From Ranitomeya imitator (lineage: Eukaryota): 64,000 bases of DNA. Position 1 is the stretch's first letter, and every line of letters begins with the position of its first letter. The DNA lies in NCBI RefSeq assembly GCF_032444005.1, contig NC_091290.1, forward strand, positions 133,796,001 through 133,860,000. The letters are read 5' to 3'. Of this stretch, positions 10,638-41,400 are shown piece after piece. Position numbers and translations under genes: made by a program. The notes beneath the pieces were generated by a model. It had not been told where the DNA came from, made no database searches, and was given only the letters and a program-made list of their open reading frames with translations.

Positions 10638-10862
10638 TCACACCTTCTTAGGCACGTTAGTGATGATAGGTTTTGGGCGGGTTTTAAAAATTATCTTCCT
10701 CTTAATCAGCGCGGTTACATTGTACTTTGTCTCCGTCACATCTCCCGTGTCCATTGCGTCTGATGAGGAGCTGGTGCTCTTCACCAGAACGGCAAAAGGC
10801 TTCTCAAGACGAACGACTTTACCGTATAATATGTGATGTCCGATGATAAGAACAGGAACCCC
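10638..10862 (-). CDS. CHTF8: CHTF8 last coding exon
   Basis: Minus-strand acceptor CTCTTCTCCAG; [15 protein letters not shown]...PKKV-TGA. Confidence 0.95.
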
Positions 10863-13800
10863 CTGGAGAAGAGCAATACAATATAGTGATAAGCTCAGGG
10901 GAGGAGAAATATATGTCCTTATTATATAGAGTATTCATTAAAATGTCACACTTGGCACCTCCATCTGACGGTCATGTGATATGGCATCACAGCGTGCATA
11001 TCACTGCAGGTAAAAATAAGCCGAGCTCTGAATATTCTGGATGCATATGACACCTAGTGGCCTTATATAGTATTACAATCAAACTTTATATACAGTGCCG
11101 AAAATAAGTATTTGATACATTGACGATTTTGCAAGTTTTCCCCTACATAGAATGGAGGTCTGTAATTTTTATCGTAGGTACACTTTACCGTGAGAGACAG
11201 AATCTTAAACAAAAAAAAACAGAAAATCACATTGTAAGTTGTTTACATAATTGAATTGCATGAAATAAGTATTTGATCACCGACCAACCAGCAAGAATTC
11301 AGTCTCTCACAGACCTGTTAGTTTCTCTTTAAGAAGCCTTCCTACTCTACACTCATTACCTGGATTAATTGCACCTGTTTGAACTTGTTACCTGAATAAA
11401 AGACACCTGTCATCACACTCTGACCTCTCCACCATGGCCAAGACCAAAGAGCTGTCAAAGGGACAAAATTGTAGACCTGCACAAGGCTGGGATGGGCTAC
11501 AGGACAATAGGCAAGCAGCTTGGAGAGAAGTTAACAACTGTTGGCGCAATTATTAGAAAATGGAGGAAACTCAAGATGACTGTCAATTTTCGCTGGCCTG
11601 GGGCTCCATGCAAGATCTTTCTTCGTGGGTTAGGGTGATTCCGAGAAAGGTCAGGAATCAGCTCAGAACTACATGGGAAGACCTGGTCAATGACCTGAAG
11701 AGAGCTGGGACCACAGTCTCAAACATTACTGTTATTAACACACTACGCCCTCATGGAATAAAATCATACAGAGCATGCAAGGTCCTCCTGCTTCCGCCAG
11801 CACATGTCCAGGCCAGTTTGAAGTTCACCAATGACCATCTGGATCATCCAGAAGAGGCATGGGTTTAGGTCATGTGGTTAGATGGGACCAAAATAGAACT
11901 TTTTGGTATCAACTCCACTCGCAGTGTTTGGAGGAAGAAGAAGGATGAGTACAAACCCGAGAACACCATCCCAACCATGAAGCATGGTGGGGGAAACATA
12001 CTTTGGGGGTGCTTTTCTGCAAAGGTGAGAGGACCACTGCACTGTATTGATGGGATGGATGGGGTCATGTGTCGCAAGATTTTGACCAACAACCTCCTCT
12101 TAGTAACCGCATATAACATGGGTCGTGGCTGGGTCTTCCAGCATGACAATGACCCGAAACACACAGCCAGGGCAACTAAGGAGTGGCTCCGTAAGAAGCA
12201 TATCATGGTCCTGGAGTGGCCTAGCCAGTCTCCAGACCTGAACCCAATAGAAAATCTTTGAAAGGAGCTGAAAATCAATGTTGCCCAGCGACAGCCCCGA
12301 AACCTGAAAGATCTGGAGAAGTTCTGTATGGAGGAGGGGGCCAATATCCCTGCTGCAGTGTGTGCAAACGTGGTCAAGAACTACAGGAAACATCTTACCT
12401 CTAACTGCAAACGAAAGTTTCTGTACCAAATATTAAGCTCTGTTTTTCTATTGTATCAAATACTTATTTCATGCAACAAAATTCAAATTAATTATGTAAA
12501 AATCATAAAATGTGATTTTCTGTTTTTTTTATTGTTAGATTCTGTCTCTCACAGGTGAAGTGTACCTACAAAAAAAATGACAGACCTCTTCATTCGCTGT
12601 AGGTGGGAAAACTTGCAAAATTCACATTCAATTTTTTTTTTTGCACTTTCTGTGGTTTTAAAAGATAGCCCACAAATAAATAATTTTCCAGCTATTACAT
12701 CTCTAGACAGAAGTATCTGATAATACTGTGAGAGCGCCAACTTCACAGGAGTGCCACCAACACCAACGCTCTGCTGCTCTTTAGAGATATTTTGCTTTTT
12801 GTGGACGCACTGTGGCATGTTGGGAGTTGTAGTTTTGTAACAGCTGGAAATAACATTAAAAAAAGTGTAGCCCACTGGCAGCCTGTCCACATGACAGGTC
12901 CTTCTATTATAGGCCATCAATATGAGACCAGTGAGGGTCTGAGCCCTGGCACCCACCTCGATTAGCTGCTGATAATAGCAGAGCGGAGGGGATGTTGGAC
13001 CCCCAACAATTTAAAGATTGGTCATCGATATTACATGTCCCAATAGCCCCTTTAAAGAGGATGATTATTAGGCTGCCACTGCAGCCCATTAGGGTCATGA
13101 GGTGACACAGGTAGCCCCTCCTATTGAAGCTGTGGTCACTGAGGGGTTAAACGTCCCGGATCAGAGTTATTGGAAGGTCCCAGTAGAGAAATTGATGACT
13201 ACTCTCCCACTTGTGGAGGTTCTGTGTCAGATGCCGCACACTGGTGACTGGCAGTCGCGGCTCACCTCCGTGGTGTAGTGCAGGTCGCCCATCACCTTCC
13301 CGGCTAATCCATCCTGTTTCCGGGCTTCGATCTCTCCCTGCAGCTCCATCAGTAACCACTCGGCCGGCGGCTGCCCCCGGACATCCCTGTAACGGCAGGA
13401 GGATCAGACAGAGGGTGAGATCAGGGCATCATAGGCTGGAACACACCGTCTGCTTCACTGACAGCAAAGGGTCAGATGGAGGCACCATCACCACCTGTCA
13501 CCTCCGGCTCTGCAGGACCTCAGACCCACAGGGCATGCTGGGATTCATAGTCCCTCCTGTATCAACCACAGGGCATGCTGGGATTCATAGTCCCTACTGT
13601 ATCAACCACAGGACACGCTGGGATTCATAGTCCCTACTGTATCAACCACAGGACACGCTGGGATTCATAGTACCTACTGTATCAACCACAGGACATGCTG
13701 GGATTCATAGTCCCTACTGTATCAACCACAGGACATGCTGGGATTCATAGTCCCTACTGTATCAACCACAGGACACGCTGGGATTCATAGTCCCTACTGT

Positions 13801-15831
13801 ATCAACCACAGGACATGCTGGGATTCATAGTCCCTACTGTATCAACCACAGGGCATGCTGGGATTCATAGTCCCTCCTGTATCAAGCACAGGGCACGCTG
13901 GGATTCATAGTCCCTACTGTATCAACCACAGGGCATGCTGGGATTCATAGTCCCTCCTGTATCAAGCACAGCGCATGCTGGGATTCACAGTCCCTACTGT
14001 ATCAACCACAGGGCATGCTGGGATTCATAGTCCCTACTGTATCAACCACAGGGCATGCTGGGATTCATAGTCCCTACTGTATCAACCACAGGACACGCTG
14101 GGATTCATAGTCCCTACTGTATCAACCACAGGACACGCTGGGATTCATAGTCCCTACTGTATCAACCACAGGACACGCTGGGATTCACAGTCCCTACTGT
14201 ATCAACCACAGGACACGCTGGGATTCACAGTCCCTACTGTATCAACCACAGGACACGCTGGGATTCATAGTCCCTACTGTATCAACCACAGGACACGCTG
14301 GGATTCATAGTCCCTACTGTATCAACCACAGGACACGCTGGGATTCATAGTCCCTACTGTATCAACCACAGGACACGCTGGGATTCACAGTCCCTACTGT
14401 ATCAACCACAGGACACGCTGGGATTCATAGTCCCTACTGTATCAACCACAGGACATGCTGGGATTCATAGTCCCTACTGTATCAACCACAGGGCATGCTG
14501 GGATTCATAGTCCCTCCTGTATCAAGCACAGGGCACGCTGGGATTCATAGTCCCTACTGTATCAACCACAGGGCATGCTGGGATTCATAGTCCCTCCTGT
14601 ATCAAGCACAGCGCATGCTGGGATTCACAGTCCCTACTGTATCAACCACAGGGCATGCTGGGATTCATAGTCCCTACTGTATCAACCACAGGGCATGCTG
14701 GGATTCATAGTCCCTACTGTATCAACCACAGGACACGCTGGGATTCATAGTCCCTACTGTATCAACCACAGGACACGCTGGGATTCATAGTCCCTACTGT
14801 ATCAACCACAGGACACGCTGGGATTCACAGTCCCTACTGTATCAACCACAGGACACGCTGGGATTCATAGTCCCTCCTGTATCAACCACAGGGCATGCTG
14901 GGATTCATAGTCCCTCCTGTATCAACCACAGGACACGCTGGGATTCATAGTCCCTACTGTATCAACCACAGGGCATGCTGGGATTCACAGTCCCTACTGT
15001 ATCAACCACAGGGCATGCTGGGATTCATAGTCCCTACTGTATCAACCACAGGGCATGCTGGGATTCATAGTCCCTACTGTATCAACCACAGGGCATGCTG
15101 GGATTCATAGTCCCTACTGTATCAACCACAGGGCATGCTGGGATTCATAGTCCCTACTGTATCAACCACAGGACATGCTGGGATTCATAGTCCCTACTGT
15201 ATCAACCACAGGACATGCTGGGATTCATAGTCCCTACTGTATCAACCACAGGGCATGCTGGGATTCACAGTCCCTACTGTATCAACCACAGGGCATGCTG
15301 GGATTCATAGTCCCTACTGTACCAACCACAGGACACGCTGGGATTCATAGTCCCTACTGTATCAACCACAGGACATGCTGGGATTCATAGTCCCTACTGT
15401 ATCAACCACAGGGCATGCTGGGATTCATAGTCCCTCCTGTATCAACCACAGGACATGCTGGGATTCATAGTCCCTCCTGTATCAACCACAGGACATGCTG
15501 GGATTCATAGTCCTACAATAGGCCCATAATTAGAATGACAGGACATTATCCTGCAGCTACAGAATGAAAGGCAGGGCGTGATGGGATTTGTGGTCCCCTT
15601 TACACAAAGACTGCTAGGGACTACTGGAAATTATGGTCCTACAGCAGCTACATAATCAGAAAATCACAGCTGTGGTAATGGGAGGACACGTAGAGGCCTC
15701 TACAGAGTCAGTGTGTGACTGGACAGGCGAGGTGGGTCGGGTACAATGAGTCTGGCAGGACATGCTGGCTGGGAGTAGTAGTTCTACCCCCAGCACCGCA
15801 CCACTGACCTGGACACAACTATCTGCACCAT
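10638..15831 (-). CDS. CHTF8: Chromosome transmission fidelity factor 8; complement(join(10638..10862,13266..13386,15809..15831)), 122 aa
   Basis: Manual translation: MVQIVVSR|[40 protein letters not shown]|[28 protein letters not shown]...[19 protein letters not shown]. This matches vertebrate Ctf8. Exons are 23+121+225 = 369 nt, GT-AG, phases 2 and 0, at the syntenic position between HAS3 and UTP4. Confidence 0.95.
11093..12621 (+). mobile_element. Tc1-like DNA transposon (IR/DR type, long TIRs), inactive, in CHTF8 intron
   Basis: TA+CAGTG left end. The left TIR of about 190 bp carries AAATAAGTATTTGAT twice and is mirrored at about 12450-12621, where the outermost about 28 bp are missing. 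Transposase starts at ATG 11434 (MAKTKELSK) and includes [15 protein letters not shown] and [10 protein letters not shown], but has frameshifts and a premature stop at 12259-12261. Confidence 0.93.
13266..13386 (-). CDS. CHTF8: CHTF8 middle coding exon
   Basis: Acceptor CCGTTACAG, donor GTGAGC; [14 protein letters not shown]...GDLHYTTE. Confidence 0.95.
13525..15513. repeat. 40-bp minisatellite, 50 copies (GGGATTCATAGTCCCTACTGTATCAACCACAGGACATGCT), in CHTF8 intron 1
   Basis: GGATTCA(T/C)AG recurs every 40 bp from 13541 to 15501 with no indels. Confidence 0.97.
15809..15831 (-). CDS. CHTF8: CHTF8 first coding exon (MVQIVVSR)
   Basis: Minus strand reads GGAGG-ATGGTGCAGATAGTTGTGTCCAG|GTCAGT. 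Confidence 0.92.
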
Positions 15832-15993
15832 CCTCCCCCGCGGCGGCTCCTGTCAGCTGAAGGAACTGAACCTGGCGCCTCAGCGAGGAGGGGGCGGGGC
15901 CGACGGTGTGACGTGTTTCCGCTTCCGGCTCCCTGTGAAGCACACGTGAGGGGAGCACTAGCAACGCGAGGAGGAGCGGGGCCGGAGGAGACG
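15832..15993. promoter_or_regulatory. Compact GC-rich bidirectional CHTF8/UTP4 promoter and UTP4 non-coding first exon
   Basis: GC box GGGGCGGGGC at 15891-15900, CRE-like GTGACGTG at 15908-15915, tandem ETS-type TTCCG/CTTCCGG at about 15917-15928, E-box CACGTG at 15943-15948, and a strong donor G|GTGAGT at 15994. The genes are arranged head to head. Confidence 0.75.
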
Positions 15994-16048
15994 GTGAGTG
16001 CGCCGTATATTGAATATACCTAATATATACATATTTATATACACACAC

Positions 16049-16223
16049 GTGAAGGTATGCAGGGAACAGTAGTTCTACCATGACTGGAAAGGTACAGAGT
16101 GCAGACCCTCCAGCATTTGGGGGGATATCAGTATTGGGGGGAGATATCCCCCCCAATACTGGAGGGTCTGCACTCTGTGCCTTTCCAGTCATGGTAGAAC
16201 TACTGTTCCCAGCATACCTTCAC
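16049..16223. repeat. 175-bp near-perfect palindrome (MITE-like hairpin) in UTP4 intron 1
   Basis: Arm GTGAAGGTATGCAGGGAACAGTAGTTCTACCATGACTGGAAAGGTACAGAGTGCAGACCCTCCAG is matched by its reverse complement with about 2 mismatches. Confidence 0.9.
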
Positions 16224-16893
16224 ATATCAGGGCATGCTGGGTGTTGTAGTTCTGCAGCCTGTGAAGAGTTCCTCATTGCTGAGCAGTGACCTCCATAGAC
16301 CCATGACCTCCCAGTATAGGGGGCTCGGACCCCTGTCGTCCCCCTCCCTCGGCCGCTCTGGGGTCAGCTGTAGGGTTTGTATGGCTCTGCCTGTGTCGCC
16401 CGCTGTCTCCTGTGATTGCAGCTTCTGGAGGGTGAAGAGACCGGATCAGAGCAATCTCCGATCCCGGCCATTGCTGCAGGGTGTCCGTCATACGCTAGGA
16501 CTCGTGCCCCGCTCAGCCTGCGCCGTACATGCTGGGTTATAGAGCCACATAGGGGGCTAGACGGGCCCTTAGAGCCGCTTTTTGTCTCCCTCGCCTTCCG
16601 AGAGCTCTGTCCTTCTTATTTTTGGGTCCATGCAGCTGTATCCAGGCCCGCTCTGTGCGCTAAGAGCTGTGGGTTTTATCGTTACCATTGTGGGGTCCGT
16701 ATGACGTTCTGATCCCTCTTTATTCTAATTTTTTGGCAGATTAAGTAACTATAAAATGGCAATTCTGTCATTTCGATATGTTTACATTCTTTAGATTTTT
16801 ATTACTTTTTGTTAAAAATTAACAATCTCATATGGAGACCAATTAATAATGCGTAATAATTGCTAAATTCTTCTCTTTTGTGATTTTATAGAG

Positions 16894-19800
16894 ATGGGGG
16901 AATTCAAGGTACACCGCGTCCGCTTCTTTGACTATGTCCCGTCTGGCGTGCGCTGTATGGCGTACTCGGACCAGACCGATAGACTCGCTGTGGCTCGTAA
17001 TGATGGATCTGTAGAAATTTACAACTTTTCTGCCAACTACTACCAGGAAAAGGTATGAAGATTGATGCATAGTGTTGTCGATGTCCAACTATTTCAAAAC
17101 TACAACTGCCTGTATGTTTTTTTTTTTTTTTTGTTAACGGAAAATTAGTATATGACCATGTTTGTTGTGCAGATTATTCCTGGAGATGACAGGAGGTCCA
17201 CCGAGTCCGTTTGCTGGGCGGCCGCCGGTGAGCGGCTTTTCTCTGCTGGTCTAAATGGAGAGATCATTGAGTATGATCTGAACAAGCTCTGTGTTAAATA
17301 TTCCTTGGATGCTTTCGGAGGACCCATCTGGGGCATTGCGGCCAATCCCAGCAACACCCACCTTGCTGTACGTACCACGTCCGTCACATTTATATTTAAT
17401 CCTTCTTTTAGTTGTGTGATCTCCATTTGTAGCTGCTGTATTTCTTTACAATGTAGGTTTGCTGTGAAGATGGCTCTGTCAAGCTTTTTAGCATTACACC
17501 CGAGAAGATTATCTTTGAGAAGATCTTAGATCGGCAAAAAGGTGATTGCTGGACGATTATGTGATGTAGTCGCCTTCTAGCTGATCCCAATGGACAAGTG
17601 TCACCTATTTTTTTTCTCATTCTCCCTGTGCAGATCGTATCCTATGTCTGGCGTGGCATCCATCAGGATCTCAAATTGTCACTGGTTCTGTCAATGTCAT
17701 CAAAGTATTCAACGTCTCATCAGGTGAATATGACACAGGGTGTGTGGTCACATCATTGTAGGAAGCTTTTTGCCACTCTGGTTATATTGGGATACTGCGC
17801 TGGATTTTACTTTTGTCCCCTTTTTGTAGATTTAAATGGGTTATCCAGGCCTGGGGTTCACTCTGTGACTGCAGACTTGTTTATCCTTACAGCCTGCAGG
17901 CAGGATAGAGTGACTGCAGACTTGAACCCCAAGCCTGGACAACCTCTTTAATGCTTAATTATGCAGTCTAATCTTAATGAGTGAAGGGATATGGCGAGGC
18001 TTCATCCTCATTTAATGATATGTAAGGGTCCGCCCTGCAACACTGGTTCCTGCAGTGCTCCTCTGGCTGAAAGACTATGCATGGAAACATAACCCATCCT
18101 ATTAACTTTATAGAAGCTGCTCTTAAACAAGTAGCCTCGAACACTTGAGCTGCTCAAATCTGTCTGTAAATCTATGTACAGTGAGGGATAAAATGAAACC
18201 TGCTGCCTATAAAAGTTTATGGAGGGGGAATGAGCACAAAGCTGGAGGGTAATAGTAAAGAAAAAAAGAATAAAGTTAAATTGCTGAGCCTTCTAGTGCA
18301 GAGGGGAAAGTGCTAAAAATGCAGGACACAAGTGATGTGCTGGCCATGGCTAGTTCTAGTATTATTCCTTGTGTACACACAACACCTTATTCTGAAATGC
18401 CATATGAAATTACCGGTATGGCACATGCTATAGATAGGAACCAACTTTTTTCTAGATGTAAGAAGTAATCCTTAAGTGAATAATGTAAATGCGTTGGATT
18501 AAAGTTTATGGCCAACCTTTTAAAAGGGAGAGAATCCCTGTAGCCTGCTTCCTCTAGGCACTAGATACCACACAGTCAGTATTTTTTTGGATTGTTTCTT
18601 TTGAAGGGAGTCTGTCAGTGCAAAATGACTGTTCAAACCAAGCACAGACGTTTGGTGCACCCTTGGCGAAGCTGAGTAGTTGAGTGTACTATCTTACTTG
18701 TTTTCCATTTATCGTCATCCTCTTGCAAAGCCAGAGATGTCAATCTGAGAAGAGGAGGAGGAGATAGAAAACAACAAAAGTTGAAGGGAAGGTGCACTGA
18801 ACTTTTCAACCAGCCCAAGGGTACACTGGACACCTGAGCTTGGTTTGATCCATCATTTTGTAAAGAGTGATAAAATATATCTATATGACACTGTTGGTGC
18901 CTTGGGAAATCCTGACTGTGGGCACAAACGCAGTGTGCACCCAGCTGTAGTCTGACATATGTTGGTTCACAATAGGTCACCTTCTACATACATTGAAGCT
19001 GGACCTCCGGTCGGTGAGTGGGAGGAAGCGCAAATCCATTGTGTGGAGTGTGGCCGTCCTCTCCTGCGGAGAAATCATCAGTGCGGATTCTACAGGAAAA
19101 CTCCAGTTCTGGGAGATAAAGAACGGAACGCTTCTCCGCACGTACAACGTGGCCAGCTGTGACCTCCTGTGTCTCGCCGTGGCCAAGGTGATACTCCTGC
19201 ACACTGGGTGTTTGTCTTATAAGCTGCTGAATGACAATGCTGACCCTTCCTGTTGTTTTCCTGCAGACAGAGGACAGCCTGCTGGTGGGCACGGCTCAGG
19301 GCGTCATCTTCCAGTTCCAGCATTTGGCCGTTCAAGCAGGAAAACCAGAACAGCAATGGATTTGCACAAAGCCATTTCGATATCACACTCACGACGTAAG
19401 AGCCGTGGCGCACAGCAGCACCGCTCTTATCTCTGGTGGTACGTCAGACCCCCCCACCTACACATCAGCTTAGAAGTTACCTTCTTCTTCATCATTTCTA
19501 AAGCTGCTTCTCGTCTTCACAGGTGTTGATGGTCACATTGTTTCCCGGCCCTTGATGGAAAAGATGCAAACCAAATCCTACGAAGCTGCTCTAAGAAAAA
19601 TCACATTTCCACATGTAAGTCTGGATATGGCTGATATAGCTTAGTATTTTCAATTTCCAGCTTGCCATGAAGGGATGTTTATTGTACATCTGTCTCTTTC
19701 CTCAGCGCCATCTTATATCTTGTGCCCAAGCCTCCCGACTGCTTCTCTTCCAGTTTCCTGAACATCTCGAGTTGTGGCGACTCGGACAGACAAATGAATC

Positions 19801-29465: not shown

Positions 29466-32400
29466 CTTCTTTCTATCTATCTATTAAGATTCAAGATTCA
29501 AGATTCAAAGAAGCTTTATTGGCAGGACCAAATACACATCAGTTTTGCCAAAGCAAGTGTATAGAGGCAATAGGGATAGGGACTGAGGGGATGTTGGGTA
29601 GGAGCTGTGGGGGGAGGTGGATGGGGCAGATCCAGGTTGGGGGCTATAGTCCATGGCATAGGGGAGGTGGATGGGGCAGATCCAGGTTGGGGGCTATAGT
29701 CCATGGCATAGGGGAGGTGGATGGGGCAGGTTCAGGTTGGGGGCTATAGTCCATGGCATAGGGGAGGTGGATGGGGCAGGTCCATTGTGGGGGCTATAGT
29801 CCATGGCATAGGGAAGGTGGATGGGGCAGATCCAGGTTGGGGGCTATAGTCCATGGCATCATAGTTCTCTTTCTCGCAGTCTATGGCATTCGCTCACATA
29901 CCGCGCTGCTATCTCCACCGCTCTCTCTTCTTCTCCCAGCAAGATATATGTTTTCTCTTCCTCCTTCATGGTGATGAAGTCTGGGAAGAGATGTGAGAGT
30001 CTCCTGAAGTGAGTGTCCCTCACTGCTGAGTATTTGGAGCAGTGTAGCAGGAAGTGGGTTTCGTCCTCTATGGCCTCCTGGTCACAGTGTTGGCACAGTC
30101 TTTCCTCCCTGGGCTTGTAGCTCTGCCTGTGTCGGCCACATTCGATGGCCAGACTGTGGGCACTGAGTCTATATCGGCTCAGGATCTGGCGGTCTCTGGG
30201 GTCCGGGAGTTTCTCCAGATATGGGGCCAGTCTGTAGTCTCTCTGTAGGCTCCGGTACATGGTCAGTTTCTGTGAGCTGATGATATCATTCTTCCAGTCA
30301 CTGACATACCTCTCCTGGCCTTCATCTGCCATCTTCCTAATTCCGGCTTTTGTCAGGTTGTTGTGATTGGTGTTCTGCTCCGGTTGGGTTTGGCTGGGCT
30401 GTTCCGGGGGTTCTGGTTTTTCTGTTTCACCTTCATGTATCAGGGCTTTATGGTGATGGGAGCTTGGATTGCTCCTATGCAGGTGAGCCCGGAATGACAG
30501 CGCCCTCTTTAGAACTGTCAGGTGTAGAGGGAATCTGCCCAGCTCGGCCCGACAAGCACTGTTGGAGGTGCTCCGATGGACCTGGAGAAGGTGCTTGCAG
30601 AATTCCAGGTGGAATATTTCTGTTGGACTGGAGTCCCACTTTGACCAGTCTGGGTAGGTGTGAGGACCCCAGACTTCGCTGCCATACAGGAGGATTGGGG
30701 CGATGATGGAGTCGAAGATTTTTAGCCAGACCCTCACTGGTGGCTTCAGATGGTAGAGTGTCCTTCGGATGGCATAGAAGGTTTTGCAGGCCTTGTCTTT
30801 CAGGGTCTCTATGGCTTGTTTGAAGTTCCCTGACCGGTGAATCTCTAGGCCCAGGTAGGTATATTTGTCCGTTCCTGTGAGGTCGCAGTTGTTGAGGATA
30901 AATGATGGGTGTTGGTCTGATCTTCTCTTTCTCCTCTGGAACACCATGGTGTTGGTTTTCTTTAGGTTGACCGGTAGGGCCCAGGTGGAGCTGAATTTCT
31001 CTAGGATTTTCAGGTTGTCCTGGAGGCCTTTCTCGGTTGGTGACAGCAGCAGCAGGTCATCTGCATACAGCAGGAATTTCACCTGAGCGTCGTGGAGGGT
31101 GAGTCCTGGTGCTGAGGAGGATTCCAGGGCGGTAGCCAGCTCGTTGATGTAGATGTTGAAGAGCGTTGGGCTTAGGCTGCAGCCTTGTCTTACTCCGCGG
31201 CTCTGCTGGAAAAAAGCCGTTCTTTTGCCGCTCACACTCACGCTGCAGCGGTTCTCGGTGTAGGAGCTTTTGATGACATCGTAGGTCTTTCCTCCTATTC
31301 CACTCTCCAGCAGTTTCAGGAATAAGCCCGGGTGCCACACTGAATCAAAGGCCTTTTTAAAGTCCACAAAGCAGGCGTATATCTTCCCATTCTTTGTATT
31401 GTAGACGTGTCTCTGAATGAGGCTGTGCAGAGTATAGATGTGGTCAGTGGTGCGGTGGTTCGGCATGAACCCTGCTTGGCTCTTGTTGAGGACGTTGTGC
31501 TCGGTGAGGAAGGTGAGGATCCTCTTGTTCAGGATACTGTTGAACAGTTTTCCCAGGTTGCTGCTGACGCATATGCCTCTGTAGTTGGCTGGGTCATACC
31601 TGTCCCCACTCTTGTGGATGGGTGTGATGAGGCCTTGGTTCCAGGTACGAGGGAAGTAGCCGGCACTCAGTACAATATTGAAGAGTTTAACCATTGCAGC
31701 CTGTATTTCTGGTGGGCTGTACTTCAGCATTTCTGGTAGGATTCCATCTAGGCCACCGGCTTTTCTACTTCTTATGGAGGAGAGTCTCTCGGTTACTTCC
31801 TGTAGTGTTATAGGTGTATCCACCGGGTTTTGGAAGTTTTTGATTTTTTCCTCCATTGCTTTTAGTTTCGCCATTATGTTTTCCTGTTCTTGGCTTAGTC
31901 CTTCCTTTGGAATGTCTTTATAGAGGTCTCTGAAGTATTGGAGCCAGAGGTTGCCATTTTGGATATGGTTGTTGTTTTTCTTGTCTTTGGTGTCCATGTG
32001 GTTCCATAGTTCCCAGAAGGAGTGGTCTTGGAGGGCGTCTTGGAGTTGATTGAGCTTNNNNNNNNNNNNNNNNNNNNNNNNNNNNNNNNNNNNNNNNNNN
32101 NNNNNNNNNNNNNNNNNNNNNNNNNNNNNNNNNNNNNNNNNNNNNNNNNNNNNNNNNNNNNNNNNNNNNNNNNNNNNNNNNNNNNNNNNNNNNNNNNNNN
32201 NNNNNNNNNNNNNNNNNNNNNNNNNNNNNNNNNNNNNNNNNNNNNNNNNNNNNNNNNNNNNNNNNNNNNNNNNNNNNNNNNNNNNNNNNNNNNNNNNNNN
32301 NNNNNNNNNNNNNNNNNNNNNNNNNNNNNCGCTGGGGTGTAGCGTCGGCCGTGCTGGCTGTCACCCAGCTTTCCCAGAACCAGATATGACTTAGAAGTGG

Positions 32401-35400
32401 CAAAACAACATTTTTACCAGCTATTACTATACTTACTCCTCTTATTGCACTGCATAAAATGAAACTTGTTTATACTAACCACACCCGAAATGTACTGGTT
32501 TCAAATTGCAGAGATTTCTCCTAGTTTTTGTGAATACCTGATTTTTAGTAATTGTCTTGCGCTTCTGTTTATCACTAATAAAATCTATAGAAACAGGCAA
32601 AAAAAAGTTAGTGGAAAACTGGATATTCTTGTTCCACTGACAAATAACTTGCAGACGATATCTACCGTATTATACTCCAGAGCTGCACTCACTATTCTGC
32701 TGGTGCAGTCACTGTGTACATACATTACATTACTGATCCTGAGTTACATCCTGTATTATACTCCAGAGCTGCACTCACTATTCTGCTGGTGCAGTCACTG
32801 TGTACATACATTACATTACTGATCCTGAGTTACCTCCTGTATTATACCCCAGAGCTGCACTCACTATTCTGCTGGTGCATTCACTGTGTACATACATTAC
32901 ATTACTGATCCTGAGTTACATCCTGTATTATACCCCAGAGCTGCATTCACTATTCTGCTGGTGCAGGCACTGTGTATATACATTACATTACTGATCCTGA
33001 GTTACATCCTGTATTATACCCCAGAGCTGCACTCACTATTCTGCTGGTGCAGTCACTGTGTACATACATTACATTACTGATCCTGAGTTACATCTTGTAT
33101 CTTATCCCAGAGCTGCACTCACTATTTTGCTGGTGCAGTCACTGTGTACATACATTACATTACTGATCCTGAGTTACATCCTGTATTATACCCCAGAGCT
33201 GCACTCACTATTCTGCTGGTGCAGTCACTGTGTACATACATTACATTACTGATCCTGAGTTACATCCTGTATTATACTCCAGAGCTGCACTCACTATTCT
33301 GCTGTGCAGTCACTGTGTACATACATTACATTACTGATCCTGAGTTACATCCTGTATTATACCCCAGAGCTGCACTCACTATTCTGCTGGTGCAGTCACT
33401 GTGTACATACATTACTGATCCTGAGTTACCTCCTGTATTATACTCCAGAGCTGCACTCACTATTCTGCTGGTGCAGTCACTGTGTACATACATTACATTA
33501 CTGATCCTGAGTTACATCCTGTATTATACTCCAGAGCTGCACTCACTATTCTGCTGGTGCAGTCACTGTGTACATACATTACATTACTGATCCTGAGTTA
33601 CATCCTGTATTATACCCCAGAGCTGCACTCACTATTCTGCTGGTGCAGTCACTGTGTACATACATTACATTACTGATCCTGAGTTACATCCTGTATTATA
33701 CCCCAGAGCTGCATTCACTATTCTGCTGGTGCAGGCACTGTGTATATACATTACATTACTGATCCTGAGTTACATCCTGTATTATACCCCAGAGCTGCAC
33801 TCACTATTCTGCTGGTGCAGTCACTGTGTACATACATTACATTACTGATCCTGAGTTACATCTTGTATCATATCCCAGAGCTGCACTCACTATTCTGCTG
33901 GTGCAGTCACTGTGTACATACATTACATTACTGATCCTGAGTTACATCCTGTATTATACCCCAGAGCTGCACTCACTATTCTGCTGGTGCAGTCACTGTG
34001 TACATACATTACATTACTGATCCTGAGTTACATCCTGTATTATACTCCAGAGCTGCACTCAGTATTCTGCTGGTGCAGTCAGTGTACATACATTACATTA
34101 CTGATCCTGAGTTACATCCTGTATTATACTCCAGAGCTGCACTCACTATTCTGCTGGTGCAGTCACTGTGTACATACATTACATTACTGATCCTGAGTTA
34201 CATGCTGTATTATACTCCAGAGCTGCACTCACTATTCTGCTGGTGCAGTCACTGTGTACATACATTACATTACTGATCCTGAGTTACATCCTGTATTATA
34301 CTCCAGAGCTGCACTCACTATTCTGCTGGTGCAGTCACTGTGTACATACATTACATTACTGATCCTGAGTTACATCCTGTATTATACCCCAGAGCTGCAC
34401 TCACTATTCTGCTGGTGCAGTCACTGTGTACATACATTGCATTACTGATCCTGAGTTACATTCTGTATTATACTCCAGAGCTGCACTCACTATTCTGCTG
34501 GTGCAGTCACTGTGTACATACATTACTGATCCTGAGTTACCTCCTGTATTATACTCCAGAGCTGCACTCACTATTCTGCTGGTGCAGTCACTGTGTACAT
34601 ACATTACATTACTGATCCTGAGTTACATCCTGTATTATACTCCAGAGCTGCACTCACTATTCTGCTGGTGCAGTCACTGTGTACATACATTACATTACTG
34701 ATCCTGAGTTACATCCTGTATTATACCCCAGAGCTGCACTCACTATTCTGCTGGTGCAGTCACTGTGTACATACATTACATTACTGATCCTGAGTTACAT
34801 CCTGTATTATACCCCAGAGCTGCATTCACTATTCTGCTGGTGCAGGCACTGTGTATATACATTACATTACTGATCCTGAGTTACATCCTGTATTATACCC
34901 CAGAGCTGCACTCACTATTCTGCTGGTGCAGTCACTGTGTACATACATTACATTACTGATCCTGAGTTACATCTTGTATCATATCCCAGAGCTGCACTCA
35001 CTATTTTGCTGGTGCAGTCACTGTGTACATACATTACATTACTGATCCTGAGTTACATCCTGTATTATACCCCAGAGCTGCACTCACTATTCTGCTGGTG
35101 CAGTCACTGTGTACATACATTACATTACTGATCCTGAGTTACATCCTGTATTATACTCCAGAGCTGCACTCACTATTCTGCTGGTGCAGTCACTGTGTAC
35201 ATACATTACATTACTGATCCTGAGTTACCTCCTGTATTATACTCCAGAGCTGCACTCACTATTCTGCTGGTGCAGTCACTGTGTGCATACATTACATTAC
35301 TGATCCTGAGTTACATACTGTATTATACTCCAGAGCTGCACTCACTATTCTGCTGGTGCAGTCACTGTGTACATACATTACATTACTGATCCTGAGTTAC

Positions 35401-38400
35401 ATCCTGTATTATACTCCAGAGCTGCACTCACTATTCTGCTGGTGCAGTCACTGTGTACATACATTACATTACTGATCCTGAGTTACATCCTGTATTATAC
35501 TCCAGAGCTGCACTCACTATTCTGCTGGTACAGTCACTGTGTACATACATTACATTACTGATCCTGAGTTACATCCTGTATTATACCCCAGAGCTGCACT
35601 CACTATTCTGCTGGTGCAGTCACTGTGTACATACATTGCATTACTGATCCTGAGTTACATTCTGTATTATACTCCAGAGCTGCACTCACTATTCTGCTGG
35701 TGCAGTCACTGTATACATACATACATTACATTACTGATCCTGAGTTACATCCTGTATTATACTCCAGAGCTGCGCTCACTATTCTGCTGGTGCAGTCACT
35801 GTGTACATACATTACATTACTGATCCTGAGTTACCTCCTGTATTCTACTCCAGAGCTGCACTCACTATTCTGCTGGTGCAGTCACTGTGTACATACATTA
35901 CATTACTGATCCTGAGTTACATCCTATATTATACTCCAGAGCTGCACTCACTATTCTGCTGGTGCAGTCACTGTGTACATACATTACATTACTGATCCTG
36001 AGTTACATTCTGTATTATACTCCAGAGCTGCACTCACTATTCTGCTGGTGCAGCCACTGTGTACATACATTACATTACTGATCCTGAGTTACATCCTGTA
36101 TTATACTCCAGAGCTGCACTCACTATTCTGCTGGTGCAGTCAGTGTACATACATTACATTACTGATCCTGAGTTACACCCTGTATTATACCCCAGAGCTG
36201 CGCTCACTATTCTGCTGGTGCAGTCAGTGTACATACATTACTCATCCTGAGTTACATCCTGTATTATACCCCAGAGCTGCGCTCACTATTCTGCTGGTGC
36301 AGTCAGTGTACATACATTACTCATCCTGAGTTACATCCTGTATTATACCCCAGAGCTGCGCTCACTATTCTGCTGGTGCAGTCAGTGTACATACATTACT
36401 CATCCTGAGTTACATCCTGTATTATACTCCAGAGCTGCGCTCACTATTCTGCTGGTGCAGTCAGTGTACATACATTACTCATCCTGAGTTACATCCTGTA
36501 TTATACTCCAGAGCTGCACTCACTATTCTGCTGGTGCAGTCAGTGTACATACATTACTGATCCTGAGTTACATCCTGTATTATACTCCAGAGCTGCGCTC
36601 ACTATTCTGCTGGTGCAGTCAGTGTACATACATTACTGATCCTGAGTTACATCCTGTATTATACTCCAGAGCTGCGCTCACTATTCTGCTGGTGCAGTCA
36701 GTGTACATACATTACTGATCCTGAGTTACATCCTGTATTATACTCCAGAGCTGCGCTCACTATTCTGCTGGTGCAGTCAGTGTACATACATTACTGATCC
36801 TGAGTTACATCCTGTATTATACTCCAGAGCTGCGCTCACTATTCTGCTGGTGCAGTCAGTGTACATACATTACTGATCCTGAGTTACATCCTGAATTATA
36901 CTTCAGAGCTGCGCTTACTATTCTGCTGGTGCAGTCAGTGTACATACATTACTGATCCTGAGTTACATCCTGTATTATACTCCAGTGCTGCGCTCACTAT
37001 TCTGCTGGTGCAGTCAGTGTACATACATTACTCATCCTGAGTTACATCCTGTATTATACTCCAGAGCTGCACTCACTATTCTGCTGGTGCAGTCAGTGTA
37101 CATACATTACTCATCCTGAGTTACATCCTGTATTATACTCCAGAGCTGCACTCACTATTCTGCTGGTGCGGTCACTGTGTACATACATTACTGATCCTGA
37201 GTTACATCCTGTATTATACCCCAGAGCTGCACTCACTATTCTGCTGGTGCAGTCACTGTGTACATACATTACATTACTGATCCTGAGTTACATCCTGTAT
37301 TATACCCCAGAGCTGCACTCACTATTCTGCTGGTGCAGTCACTGTGTACATACATTACATTAATGATCCTGAGTTACATCCTGTATTATACCCCAGAGCT
37401 GCACTCACTATTCTGCTGGTGCAGTCACTGTGTACATACATTACATTACTGATCCTGAGTTACATCCTGTATTATACTCCAGAGCTGCACTCAGTATTCT
37501 GCTGGTGCAGTCAGTGTACATACATTACATTACTGATCCTGAGTTACATCCTGTATTATACTCCAGAGCTGCACTCACTATTCTGCTGGTGCAGTCACTG
37601 TGTACATACATTACATTACTGATCCTGAGTTACATGCTGTATTATACTCCAGAGCTGCACTCACTATTCTGCTGGTGCAGTCACTGTGTACATACATTAC
37701 ATTACTGATCCTGAGTTACATCCTGTATTATACTCCAGAGCTGCACTCACTATTCTGCTGGTGCAGTCACTGTGTACATACATTACATTACTGATCCTGA
37801 GTTACATCCTGTATTATACCCCAGAGCTGCACTCACTATTCTGCTGGTGCAGTCACTGTGTACATACATTGCATTACTGATCCTGAGTTACATTCTGTAT
37901 TATACTCCAGAGCTGCACTCACTATTCTGCTGGTGCAGTCACTGTATACATACATACATTACATTACTGATCCTGAGTTACATCCTGTATTATACTCCAG
38001 AGCTGCGCTCACTATTCTGCTGGTGCAGTCACTGTGTACATACATTACATTACTGATCCTGAGTTACCTCCTGTATTCTACTGCAGAGCTGCACTCACTA
38101 TTCTGCTGGTGCAGTCACTGTGTACATACATTACATTACTGATCCTGAGTTACATCCTATATTATACTCCAGAGCTGCACTCACTATTCTGCTGGTGCAG
38201 TCACTGTGTACATACATTACATTACTGATCCTGAGTTACATTCTGTATTATACTCCAGAGCTGCACTCACTATTCTGCTGGTGCAGCCACTGTGTACATA
38301 CATTACATTACTGATCCTGAGTTACATCCTGTATTATACTCCAGAGCTGCACTCACTATTCTGCTGGTGCAGTCAGTGTACATACATTACATTATTGATC

Positions 38401-41400
38401 CTGCGTTACACCCTGTATTATACCCCAGAGCTGCGCTCACTATTCTGCTGGTGCAGTCAGTGTACATACATTACTCATCCTGAGTTACATCCTGTATTAT
38501 ACCCCAGAGCTGCGCTCACTATTCTGCTGGTGCAGTCAGTGTACATACATTACTCATCCTGAGTTACATCCTGTATTATACTCCAGAGCTGCGCTCACTA
38601 TTCTGCTGGTGCAGTCAGTGTACATACATTACTGATCCTGAGTTACATCCTGTATTATACTCCAGAGCTGCGCTCACTATTCTGCTGGTGCAGTCAGTGT
38701 ACATACATTACTCATCCTGAGTTACATCCTGTATTATACTCCAGAGCTGCACTCACTATTCTGCTGGTGCAGTCAGTGTACATACATTACTCATCCTGAG
38801 TTACATCCTGTATTATACTCCAGAGCTGCACTCACTATTTTGCTGGTGCGGTCACTGTGTACATACATTACTGATCCTGAGTTACATCCTGTATTATACC
38901 CCAGAGCTGCACTCACTATTCTGCTGGTGCAGTCACTGTGTACATACATTACATTACTGATCCTGAGTTACATCCTGTATTATACCTCAGAGCTGCACTC
39001 ACTATTCTGCTGGTGCAGTCACTGTGTACATACATTACATTAATGATCCTGAGTTACATCCTGTATTATACCCCAGAGCTGCACTCACTATTCTGCTGGT
39101 GCAGTCACTGTGTACATACATTACATTACTGATCCTGAGTTACATCCTGTATTATACTCCAGAGCTGCACTCAGTATTCTGCTGGTGCAGTCAGTGTACA
39201 TACATTACATTACTGATCCTGAGTTACATCCTGTATTATACTCCAGAGCTGCACTCACTATTCTGCTGGTGCAGTCACTGTGTACATACATTACATTACT
39301 GATCCTGAGTTACATGCTGTATTATACTCCAGAGCTGCACTCACTATTCTGCTGGTGCAGTCACTGTGTACATACATTACATTACTGATCCTGAGTTACA
39401 TCCTGTATTATACTCCAGAGCTGCACTCACTATTCTGCTGGTGCAGTCACTGTGTACATACATTACATTACTGATCCTGAGTTACATCCTGTATTATACC
39501 CCAGAGCTGCACTCACTATTCTGCTGGTGCAGTCACTGTGTACATACATTGCATTACTGATCCTGAGTTACATTCTGTATTATACTCCAGAGCTGCACTC
39601 ACTATTCTGCTGGTGCAGTCACTGTGTACATACATTACTGATCCTGAGTTACCTCCTGTATTATACTCCAGAGCTGCACTCACTATTCTGCTGGTGCAGT
39701 CACTGTGTACATACATTACATTACTGATCCTGAGTTACATCCTGTATTATACTCCAGAGCTGCACTCACTATTCTGCTGGTGCAGTCACTGTGTACATAC
39801 ATTACATTACTGATCCTGAGTTACATCCTGTATTATACCCCAGAGCTGCACTCACTATTCTGCTGGTGCAGTCACTGTGTACATACATTACATTACTGAT
39901 CCTGAGTTACATCCTGTATTATACCCCAGAGCTGCATTCACTATTCTGCTGGTGCAGGCACTGTGTATATACATTACATTACTGATCCTGAGTTACATCC
40001 TGTATTATACCCCAGAGCTGCACTCACTATTCTGCTGGTGCAGTCACTGTGTACATACATTACATTACTGATCCTGAGTTACATCTTGTATCATATCCCA
40101 GAGCTGCACTCACTATTTTGCTGGTGCAGTCACTGTGTACATACATTACATTACTGATCCTGAGTTACATCCTGTATTATACCCCAGAGCTGCACTCACT
40201 ATTCTGCTGGTGCAGTCACTGTGTACATACATTACATTACTGATCCTGAGTTACATCCTGTATTATACTCCAGAGCTGCACTCACTATTCTGCTGGTGCA
40301 GTCACTGTGTACATACATTACATTACTGATCCTGAGTTACCTCCTGTATTATACTCCAGAGCTGCACTCACTATTCTGCTGGTGCAGTCACTGTGTACAT
40401 ACATTACATTACTGATCCTGAGTTACATCCTGTATTATACTCCAGAGCTGCACTCACTATTCTGCTGGTGCAGTCACTGTGTACATACATTACATTACTG
40501 ATCCTGAGTTACATCCTGTATTATACTCCAGAGCTGCACTCACTATTCTGCTGGTGCAGTCACTGTGTACATACATTACATTACTGATCCTGAGTTACAT
40601 CCTGTATTATACCCCAGAGCTGCACTCACTATTCTGCTGGTGCAGTCACTGTGTACATACATTGCATTACTGATCCTGAGTTACATTCTGTATTATACTC
40701 CAGAGCTGCACTCACTATTCTGCTGGTGCAGTCACTGTATACATACATACATTACATTACTGATCCTGAGTTACATCCTGTATTATACTCCAGAGCTGCG
40801 CTCACTATTCTGCTGGTGCAGTCACTGTGTACATACATTACATTACTGATCCTGAGTTACCTCCTGTATTCTACTCCAGAGCTGCACTCACTATTCTGCT
40901 GGTGCAGTCACTGTGTACATACATTACATTACTGATCCTGAGTTACATCCTATATTATACTCCAGAGCTGCACTCACTATTCTGCTGGTGCAGTCACTGT
41001 GTACATACATTACATTACTGATCCTGAGTTACATTCTGTATTATACTCCAGAGCTGCACTCACTATTCTGCTGGTGCAGCCACTGTGTACATACATTACA
41101 TTACTGATCCTGAGTTACATCCTGTATTATACTCCAGAGCTGCACTCACTATTCTGCTGGTGCAGTCAGTGTACATACATTACATTACTGATCCTGAGTT
41201 ACACCCTGTATTATACCCCAGAGCTGCGCTCACTATTCTGCTGGTGCAGTCAGTGTACATACATTACTCATCCTGAGTTACATCCTGTATTATACCCCAG
41301 AGCTGCGCTCACTATTCTGCTGGTGCAGTCAGTGTACATACATTACTCATCCTGAGTTACATCCTGTATTATACCCCAGAGCTGCGCTCACTATTCTGCT

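What the first reader, a model, noticed from the sequence alone, without database searches (positions are those of the whole stretch)
13525..15513. 2-kb minisatellite is a tandem array of ZNF143/THAP11-type promoter motifs beside a bidirectional promoter
Seen: on the minus strand each 40-bp unit contains GACTATGAATCCCAGC(A/G)TG. ACTATGAATCCCA matches the degenerate motif ACTAYRnnnCCCR exactly in about 42 of 50 units; by my count the other 8 have the CACAG variant. The following GCATG matches the extended Staf/ZNF143 site (ACTACAATTCCCAGCATGC type). The array ends about 300 bp from the first CHTF8 coding exon. Known: this motif is associated with ZNF143(Staf)/THAP11/HCF-1 and is enriched at bidirectional housekeeping promoters. 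Inference: a promoter motif may have been amplified into a VNTR acting as a copy-number-tunable binding platform or sink for the CHTF8/UTP4 pair. Caveat: single copies of the motif are also dispersed in this window (about 1992, 4343, 25987, 47670, 51040), so it may be a common frog repeat seed with no function.
Basis: partly seen in the sequence, partly recalled or inferred. Interest (0 to 1): 0.72.

Follow-up and report, generated by a model that had tools for sequence, protein, structure and literature searches.

The report
Promoter motif copied fifty times
In the poison frog Ranitomeya variabilis, one conserved ZNF143/THAP11-type promoter motif just inside the first intron of CHTF8 has been copied head-to-tail about 50 times; it is most likely an ordinary repeat expansion at a repeat-prone spot, though it gives a natural 1-versus-50 copy series for testing what extra binding sites do.

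Summary
Window 13526-15513 is a 40-bp x 49.7 minisatellite (96% matches). On the minus strand, 42 of 50 units match ACTAYRNNNCCCR exactly and 8 carry ACTGTG. Eighteen full units (19 sites) also match 16 of 18 positions of the published Staf/ZNF143 consensus.

The genome is Ranitomeya variabilis. The array fills 1,988 of the 2,421 bp of CHTF8 intron 1. It starts 294 bp after coding exon 1 and lies about 0.4-2.4 kb upstream of the UTP4 start site. An RNA contig shows the intron is spliced out.

Orthologous loci settle the origin. The tree frog Dendropsophus has three single motifs at the start of this intron, and the third lines up with the first array unit (23/26 identical; neighbouring DNA about 50%). 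One conserved site was therefore amplified in place. A related species in the read archive has the same junction.

Nothing shows selection for many copies:
- Common variants hit core motif positions.
- A perfect 480-bp internal duplicate shows recent unequal exchange.
- Xenopus, Pyxicephalus, Mantella and Mixophyes carry unrelated minisatellites beside the same promoter.

Binding, copy-number variation and any expression effect are untested. Earlier notes of this scan report similar arrays at STX4 and RAB40C in this genome.

The parts
13526..15513 (-). 40-bp x 49.7 minisatellite; each unit carries an M4/SBS2-like site in the orientation of CHTF8 transcription
14389..14868 (-). 12-unit block that is 100% identical to 13749-14228 (offset 640 bp, i.e. 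16 units): a recent internal duplication
13749..14228 (-). second copy of the perfect 480-bp internal duplicate
13387..15807 (-). CHTF8 intron 1 (2,421 bp, of which 1,988 bp is the array); spliced out in RNA
   Evidence: (X9 record 25 ends at 15808 and its loose end is the reverse complement of the start of exon 2)
15808..15895 (-). CHTF8 exon 1: ATG at 15830, coding part 15808-15830. The 5' UTR reaches at least 15885. A cDNA cap-switch oligo sits at about 15895, but on a contig that may come from a look-alike locus.
13266..13386 (-). CHTF8 coding exon 2
   Evidence: matches frog CHTF8 proteins
10641..10862 (-). CHTF8 last coding exon (74 aa), 100% identical to Ranitomeya variabilis CHTF8
15871..15950 (.). 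conserved bidirectional core promoter (E-box, ETS pair, CRE-like box, GC box), alignable from Xenopus to Ranitomeya; part of the only CpG-rich stretch (15801-16000)
15942..15993 (+). UTP4 non-coding exon 1; a cap-switch oligo marks the 5' end at 15942, and the exon is joined to exon 2
   Evidence: (X3 record 16 and loose ends)
16892..17052 (+). UTP4 exon 2 with the start codon at 16894
15755..15790 (-). motif 1 of the intron cluster (ACTACTACTCCCAGCC...); it corresponds to Dendropsophus L004:6099 and to the small ACTACTAC repeat of Engystomops
15624..15639 (-). degenerate motif-like copy (GGACCATAATTTCCAG)
   Evidence: read directly
15571..15598 (-). motif 2, decayed in Ranitomeya; aligned with intact sites in Leptodactylus (L003:6163) and Dendropsophus (L004:6151)
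16226..16250 (-). single SBS2-type site in UTP4 intron 1 (M4 exact, 16/18 of the SBS consensus); a roughly 35-nt stretch that occurs at many loci in the reads
16049..16223 (.). 175-bp hairpin element (81-nt arms, 95% complementary) whose arms carry SBS-like motifs

Best explanation
The array is an in-place tandem amplification, in the dendrobatid lineage, of one ancestral ZNF143/THAP11 (SBS2/M4) site. That site was the third of a small cluster of such motifs at the start of CHTF8 intron 1, a few hundred bp upstream of the UTP4 start site, and the cluster is shared by hyloid frogs. The amplification went by replication slippage and unequal exchange, at a promoter-proximal position where frogs repeatedly form minisatellites whatever the sequence. 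The array is removed with the intron. By sequence, 18 full units (19 sites with the partial terminal unit) are good ZNF143 sites and 42 are good THAP11 sites, so some occupancy near the open promoter is likely. The many copies are most probably a neutral or nearly neutral by-product rather than a selected copy-number device. Shown: the anatomy, the splicing, the single collinear ancestral site, the shared junction in a related species, and the internal duplication. Inferred: the mechanism of expansion, protein occupancy, and the lack of selected function.
For: Array and motif counts. Species and gene model. Splicing and transcript ends. Collinear orthology: the first Ranitomeya unit against the single Dendropsophus site is 23/26 identical, while DNA between motifs is 29/56 and the spacer 5/13. 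Motif 2 aligns in three families. Mixophyes, Xenopus, Pyxicephalus and Mantella have no such motifs in intron 1. A related species (X5, about 7% substitutions in the flank) has contigs crossing the 15513/15514 junction into unit sequence and a high depth of unit words. A perfect 480-bp duplicate at a 16-unit offset shows recent unequal exchange. Variable positions number 5 of 26 in the motif and 3 of 14 outside it. The commonest variants hit SBS core positions (A29/G20 and T27/C22). Independent minisatellites with unrelated units lie within 2.5 kb of the same promoter in X. tropicalis (34 bp x 12.9), Pyxicephalus (39 x 14.7), Mantella (38 x 48.7 and 34 x 41.2) and Mixophyes; none matches M4 or SBS. 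In Engystomops the motif-1 unit is present 3 times in one assembly and once in the other. Rough depth of unit words in the same-species DNA run is about 60 single-copy equivalents, close to the 50 assembled copies, so the unit is not a large dispersed family.
Against: No binding, accessibility, methylation or expression data exist, so a function of the copies cannot be excluded. The array has persisted since the split from a related species. Earlier notes of this scan report similar arrays at STX4 and RAB40C, and the STX4 one is said to be conserved across families, which hints at more than chance. All units keep one orientation, and 42 of 50 keep an exact M4 match. The promoter-proximal excess of minisatellites rests on only eight species' loci. 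In Ranitomeya itself the whole window is repeat-rich (0.40 of bases near the promoter against 0.31 elsewhere). Any two SBS sites resemble each other, so the 23/26 identity alone is weaker evidence than the collinearity.
Confidence: 0.7

Rival explanations
1. Selected binding platform. The 50 sites are kept because dense ZNF143/THAP11/HCF-1 loading next to the bidirectional promoter tunes CHTF8 and/or UTP4 output. This could work as an upstream enhancer-like block for UTP4, or as a roadblock or buffer in CHTF8 intron 1. Copy number would be the tunable parameter.
For: Exact M4 in 42 of 50 units and 16/18 SBS matches at 19 sites (18 full units plus the partial terminal unit), all in one orientation with 40-bp spacing that leaves room for each site. 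The array spans -429 to -2416 from the UTP4 start, inside the window where M4 is conserved in mammals (PMC5006282). It is present in a related species. Similar arrays are noted at two other promoters of this genome. ZNF143 bound downstream of a start site can act as a roadblock (10.1101/2024.05.13.594008).
Against: High-frequency variants weaken the ZNF143 core: 20 of 49 units have G at the A of ..MATSC.., and 27 of 49 have T at the following C. The motif shows no lower variability than the spacer. The array is absent in Hylidae and Leptodactylidae, which manage with single sites. Unrelated arrays sit at the same place in other frogs. The array is CpG-poor and lies outside the CpG island. Utp4 and Chtf8 were not found among ZNF143 or RONIN targets in the supplements that could be read.
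Confidence: 0.17
2. Inserted repeat. The array is the internal satellite of a transposable element or a member of a dispersed satellite family that landed in the intron. Its likeness to the Dendropsophus site would then only reflect that all SBS sites look alike.
For: The motif is about 8-fold over-represented as single copies in the window. A hairpin element with SBS-like arms lies about 500 bp away. A roughly 35-nt SBS2 stretch is found in many unrelated contigs. A Tc1-like element at 58.1-58.2 kb carries canonical SBS1 sites. In mammals, SBS2 sites derive partly from MLT1J elements (PMC3627581).
Against: The flanks are single-copy in reads (depth about 9) and alignable to other frogs on the 5' side. 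No terminal inverted repeats or target-site duplication were seen at the junctions. The spacing to motif 2 is kept (84 bp against 96 bp in Dendropsophus). Unit depth roughly equals the assembled copy number.
Confidence: 0.07
3. Factor sink or assembly artefact. Either the array titrates ZNF143/THAP11 away from other promoters, or its length is an assembly error.
For: Fifty sites lie in one place. The perfect 480-bp internal duplicate could in principle be an assembler duplication.
Against: At the single-copy density seen here (about 1 per 9 kb), a multi-gigabase genome would hold several hundred thousand such motifs, so 50 more are negligible; this is an inference. Unit sequence and the junction are seen in independent runs of two species, at a depth that fits tens of copies.
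Confidence: 0.03

Closest known systems
SBS2 / M4 composite site (Staf/ZNF143 site with the ACTACA extension bound by THAP11/Ronin-HCF-1)
   Same: The unit matches ACTAYRNNNCCCR exactly. In the best variant it matches 16 of 18 positions of YWCCCRNMATSCMYYRCR, with the two parts in the standard register, next to a CpG-island bidirectional housekeeping promoter.
   Different: Known sites occur once or twice per promoter; PMC5006282 says most M4 genes have one copy. Here there are 50 in tandem. The 5' part reads ACTATG rather than ACTACA, and half of the units carry core changes. No binding has been shown.
Promoter-proximal minisatellites (VNTRs) that carry transcription-factor sites
   Same: Units of 10-100 bp lie head to tail near a promoter, there is internal higher-order duplication from unequal exchange, and the number of motifs scales with the number of units.
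   Different: Length polymorphism and an effect on expression are documented for the known human cases. Neither could be tested here.
DXZ4-type tandem arrays of CTCF sites
   Same: A tandem array in which every unit carries the site of one architectural or promoter factor, all in one orientation.
   Different: DXZ4 is a macrosatellite with kilobase units and shown allele-specific CTCF binding (PMC3491370, title and abstract seen). This is a 40-bp minisatellite with no binding data and a different factor.
MLT1J-derived SBS2 sites of mammals
   Same: Repeated DNA multiplies ZNF143/THAP11 sites (PMC3627581).
   Different: There the copies are dispersed by retrotransposition. Here one site was multiplied locally in tandem.
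Other motif-seeded intron minisatellites noted by this scan in the same genome (STX4, RAB40C, TERF2, KCTD19, IFT122)
   Same: A single factor motif near the start of a first intron or a promoter is copied head to tail, and single-copy counterparts exist in other frog families.
   Different: The STX4 array is reported as shared by several frog families. The CHTF8 array is absent from Hylidae and Leptodactylidae and is so far seen only in Ranitomeya and one related species.

Membership tests
M4 / THAP11-binding site | match to ACTAYRNNNCCCR | tested here: met
   42 of 50 units match exactly; 8 units have G at position 4 (ACTGTG)
M4 / THAP11-binding site | purine-rich upstream core RRACTAYR (PMC5006282) | tested here: met
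   The units read GGACTATG; one unit has GTAC
M4 / THAP11-binding site | location within about 2.5 kb upstream to 0.5 kb downstream of a start site | tested here: met
   -429 to -2416 from the UTP4 5' end at 15942. For CHTF8 it is +382 to +2369, mostly outside that window
Staf/ZNF143 binding site (SBS) | match to the 18-bp consensus YWCCCRNMATSCMYYRCR | tested here: inconclusive
   16/18 in 18 full units (19 sites), 15/18 in 13 units, 14/18 in 18 units. The window expectation for 2 or fewer mismatches is 3.8 sites. No weight matrix was available.
Staf/ZNF143 binding site (SBS) | binding by ZNF143, THAP11 or HCF-1 | not testable with these tools
   No ChIP, CUT&RUN or EMSA data for this species
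Minisatellite / VNTR | head-to-tail units of 10-100 bp | tested here: met
   Period 40, 49.7 copies, 96% matches, no indels
Minisatellite / VNTR | signs of unequal exchange | tested here: met
   Perfect 480-bp duplicate at a 640-bp offset
Minisatellite / VNTR | copy number varies between individuals | not tested
   The reads tool refuses the repeat itself and only contigs were available. Indirect hints only: the Engystomops mini-repeat is 3 versus 1 copies between two assemblies, and unit depth is higher in the related species.
Transposon-borne or dispersed satellite | the same unit at many loci, with element ends or a target duplication at the junctions | tested here: not met
   Flanks are single-copy, unit depth is about 60 equivalents against 50 assembled copies, no other copy lies in the window, and the flank is collinear with orthologues. 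A whole-genome search was not possible.

The most novel reading that the evidence does not exclude
Tandem arrays of the ZNF143/THAP11 site next to promoters (CHTF8 here; STX4 and RAB40C in earlier notes) may form a recurrent class in dendrobatid frogs and not be chance. Either stably occupied sites themselves provoke tandem duplication, for instance by fork stalling at a protein roadblock or by promoter-directed recombination in a lineage thought to lack PRDM9. Or the arrays are retained as high-avidity loading platforms whose length tunes housekeeping promoters.
Probability: 0.15. Interest if true: 0.65.

Novelty: new member of a known kind. Interest (0 to 1): 0.4.

Why it matters
ZNF143, THAP11 and HCF-1 control many housekeeping promoters. 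How the number and position of their sites shape output is still studied mostly with artificial reporters. This locus offers a natural series at one orthologous position: three single sites in a tree frog, one to three copies of a neighbouring motif in Engystomops, and about 50 copies in Ranitomeya, upstream of one gene and inside the first intron of its divergent partner. Together with the STX4 and RAB40C arrays of the same genome, it allows a direct test of whether bound factor sites seed minisatellites, or whether repeat-prone promoter flanks simply amplify whatever lies there. If the array turns out to be methylated and unbound, it is only one more minisatellite in a very repeat-rich genome.

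Tried and rejected
Only the 5' junction could be laid, so array length in other individuals, the 3' junction and the unit variants of the related species remain unknown.
Rhinoderma was not on record.
- Literature searches for tandem arrays of this motif, for the motif in frog repeats, and for VNTRs linked to ZNF143 found nothing relevant.
- I looked for CHTF8 or UTP4 among published ZNF143/RONIN/HCFC1 targets. The supplements were not held or gave no hit, and Utp4 was unchanged in the one table that lists it.
- A single-strand fold of four units is not better than shuffles (z = -1.6), so a hairpin-driven expansion has no support.
- The findings search by sequence gave a blank, which means nothing according to the operators.
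I repeated it from references only.
- CpG observed/expected in the array is low (0-0.4), but I rejected it as evidence of methylation, because all units descend from one nearly CpG-free sequence.
- The joined (spliced) CHTF8 model was not searched. Exons were used one by one, by reference, as required.
Full report
**1. What is there**

Tandem Repeats Finder reports a single array at window 13526-15513, with period 40, 49.7 copies, 96% matches and no indels. Read on the minus strand, every unit starts GGACTATGAATCCCAGC.

The degenerate promoter motif ACTAYRNNNCCCR (M4) occurs 58 times in the window against 0.89 expected from shuffles. Of these, 42 are array units, all on the minus strand and exactly 40 bp apart. 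The remaining 8 units read ACTGTG.

The 18-bp Staf/ZNF143 consensus quoted in PMC5006282 is YWCCCRNMATSCMYYRCR.
- It is matched at 16 of 18 positions by 19 sites in the array, which are 18 full units plus the partial terminal unit.
- It is matched at 15/18 by 13 units and at 14/18 by 18 units.
- The two parts stand in the register of the published 25-bp SBS2 site: the ACTACA extension bound by THAP11, followed by the ZNF143 core (PMC3627581).

**2. Where it is**

The last coding exon of the minus-strand gene (10641-10862) is 100% identical to CHTF8 of Ranitomeya variabilis, so the window comes from that poison frog, assembly GCA_051348905.1.

CHTF8 coding exon 1 is 15808-15830 and exon 2 is 13266-13386. 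Intron 1 (13387-15807) is 2,421 bp, of which 1,988 bp is the array. The array begins 294 bp after exon 1 and ends 139 bp before exon 2.

An RNA-type contig (X9) matches 15808-15885 without a mismatch and then continues with the reverse complement of the start of exon 2. The intron, with the array, is therefore spliced out.

A cDNA run (X3) carries a cap-switch oligo next to 15942 on a contig that joins 15942-15993 to the UTP4 start-codon exon (16892-17052). This puts the UTP4 5' end at 15942. A second oligo marks a minus-strand 5' end near 15895, but that contig matches only 35 nt and may come from a look-alike locus.

The two genes thus start about 50 bp apart. The array spans about +382 to +2369 for CHTF8 and -429 to -2416 for UTP4. 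Only 15801-16000 is CpG-rich; the array is CpG-poor.

**3. Origin: one conserved site, amplified in place**

I fetched the orthologous locus from eight assemblies of seven other frog species. The core promoter and exon 1 align from Xenopus to Ranitomeya.

- **Dendropsophus ebraccatus (Hylidae).** The first 250 bp of intron 1 hold three single M4/SBS sites, at L004:6099, 6151 and 6247.
- **Leptodactylus fuscus.** It keeps the second site (L003:6163).
- **Ranitomeya.** It has a first site at about 15770-15782, which shares the odd CCCAGCCA spelling of the first Dendropsophus site. It has a decayed second site at 15571-15598. The array stands where the third site should be.
- **The key comparison.** The first array unit and the single Dendropsophus site are 23/26 identical, including 16 consecutive core bases. 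The DNA between motifs is 29/56 identical with 24 gap columns, and the spacer after the motif is 5/13. The distances from motif 2 are 84 and 96 bp.
- **Outgroups.** Mixophyes, Xenopus tropicalis, Pyxicephalus and Mantella have no such motif in this intron.

The simplest reading is that a motif cluster arose in hyloid frogs, was kept for tens of millions of years (my estimate from general knowledge of frog phylogeny), and that its third member was amplified in the dendrobatid lineage.

A DNA run of a related species (coded organism B) supports this. It differs by 37 substitutions and 24 gap letters over 502 nt of flank. It has contigs that cross the 15513/15514 junction into unit sequence, and its unit words reach a depth far above single copy. 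The array therefore predates that split.

In the same-species run, the mean depth over the array bins is roughly 60 single-copy equivalents, close to the 50 assembled copies. The flanks are single-copy. I saw no inverted ends or target duplication. This argues against a dispersed or transposon-borne satellite. The depth figures are rough by the tool's own warning.

**4. How it grew, and whether the copies are under selection**

At an offset of 16 units, a 480-bp stretch (14389-14868 against 13749-14228) is 100% identical. This is the mark of a very recent unequal exchange or large slippage event.

Among the 49 full units only 8 positions vary: 5 of the 26 motif positions and 3 of the 14 others. 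The two commonest variants fall in the ZNF143 core:
- A against G at the A of ..MATSC.. (29 to 20).
- T against C at the next C (27 to 22).

The edge units and the Dendropsophus site read GCATGT, so that form is probably ancestral. One derived form (GCATGC) improves the consensus match and another (GCGTGT) worsens it. I see no sign that the motif is protected within the array. The pattern is what concerted evolution of a neutral array gives.

**5. A repeat-prone place**

Independent minisatellites with unrelated units lie within 2.5 kb of the same promoter in other frogs:

| Species | Unit x copies | Position |
|---|---|---|
| X. tropicalis | 34 bp x 12.9 | intron 1 |
| Pyxicephalus | 39 bp x 14.7 | starts 235 bp after the ATG |
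| Mantella | 38 bp x 48.7 | UTP4 side |
| Mantella | 34 bp x 41.2 | intron 2 |
| Mixophyes | several short arrays | just upstream |

In these four species, the minisatellite share of bases within 2.5 kb of the promoter against the share elsewhere in the locus is 0.09 vs 0.01 in X. tropicalis, 0.12 vs 0.00 in Pyxicephalus, 0.65 vs 0.13 in Mantella and 0.07 vs 0.01 in Mixophyes. None of their units matches M4 or SBS better than shuffles.

In Engystomops, the motif-1 unit at the very start of the intron is present three times in one assembly and once in the other. So tandem duplication is recurrent here whatever the sequence, and in Ranitomeya it happened to catch a factor site. The sample is small, and the Ranitomeya window is repeat-rich throughout, so I treat this as suggestive.

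A possible cause is recombination directed to promoters in a lineage that I recall as lacking PRDM9. That is my inference and was not tested.

**6. Likely working**

By sequence, many units could bind ZNF143 and/or THAP11-HCF-1. ZNF143 needs the 3' part of the site, THAP11 needs the ACTAYR part, and in vitro the two exclude each other on one site (PMC3627581; PMC5006282). The 40-bp spacing leaves room for each site.

Being next to an active promoter, the promoter-near units are probably occupied. If so, the array would act as extra upstream sites for UTP4. For CHTF8 it would act as intronic sites, which in human cells can hinder early elongation (10.1101/2024.05.13.594008).

I put about 0.7 on 'expansion without selected function', about 0.17 on a selected platform, about 0.07 on an inserted repeat, and about 0.03 on a sink or an artefact. 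A sink is unlikely because single motifs are already about eight times more frequent than chance in ordinary DNA of this window.

**7. Comparison with what is known**

The unit passes the sequence tests for an M4 site and partly for an SBS. Binding could not be tested.

As a structure it is a minisatellite carrying a factor site, a known kind: promoter VNTRs, and CTCF arrays such as DXZ4. I found no paper describing tandem arrays of this particular motif.

Earlier notes of this scan list similar arrays in the same genome at STX4 intron 1 and upstream of RAB40C. They also list CTCF-, CRE- and RFX-seeded intron arrays, several of them read as by-products of repeat-prone spots. I did not re-test those loci. 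The CHTF8 case differs from the STX4 note in that the array itself is not shared with other frog families.

**8. Limits**

There are no binding, chromatin, methylation or population data. Only one junction was laid in reads. The related species is coded, so the age of the array is not dated. Array-unit words occur in a cDNA-type run (X3) at a collapsed depth of 330-750 without the unique intron flank. This could be pre-mRNA, another locus or DNA carry-over and is left open. The spliced CHTF8 model was not joined for any search; exons were used singly, by reference.

Noticed in passing
window 15861-15949: The core promoter and 5' UTR block of CHTF8/UTP4 is covered by many partly matching contigs (summed depth about 1,500 against about 9 for single copy) in DNA runs of two species. 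It also lies inside longer RNA contigs. It therefore looks like an 85-nt multi-copy family, although the same block is conserved at the orthologous promoter in all frogs examined. No other copy lies in this window.
   Followed up: partly
window 16049-16223: A 175-bp hairpin element in UTP4 intron 1 (81-nt arms, 95% complementary). Its arms carry SBS-like motifs, and it sits directly beside a single SBS2 site at 16226-16250.
   Followed up: partly
window 58130-58220: An inverted pair of near-canonical ZNF143 SBS1 sites (one at 58201-58218 with a single mismatch) around a TCTCGCGAGA box. It lies immediately upstream of a Tc1/mariner-like transposase reading frame, so it may be a transposon-borne promoter.
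   Followed up: no
window 29611-29859: A 50-bp x 5 minisatellite about 2 kb downstream of the SNTB2 first coding exon (around 27.4-27.9 kb, plus strand). Its unit matches M4 exactly but not the ZNF143 part. It lies between TCTA microsatellites and masked N runs.
   Followed up: partly
window 32667-46063: A 13.4-kb satellite of 86-bp units (about 160 copies, 95% matches), apparently inside the SNTB2 first intron.
   Followed up: no
L001:6042-6129 versus L002:6040-6075: Two Engystomops pustulosus assemblies differ in the number of copies (three versus one) of a 25-34-bp ACTACTAC-containing unit right after CHTF8 exon 1. Their intron 1 lengths also differ by about 1.7 kb.
   Followed up: partly
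L008:946-2796 and L007:1974-2790: Mantella has a 38-bp x 48.7 array on the UTP4 side of the shared promoter. Pyxicephalus has two short 38-bp repeats at the corresponding side with a similar unit, so this may be an older ranoid array.
   Followed up: no
window 11400-12400: A Tc1/mariner-like transposase remnant lies in CHTF8 intron 2, antisense to the gene (read).
   Followed up: no
window 15340-15440 in run X3: A cDNA-type run holds near-identical array-unit contigs at a collapsed depth of 330-750 but nothing from the unique intron flank. The source (pre-mRNA, another locus or DNA carry-over) is undecided.
   Followed up: no
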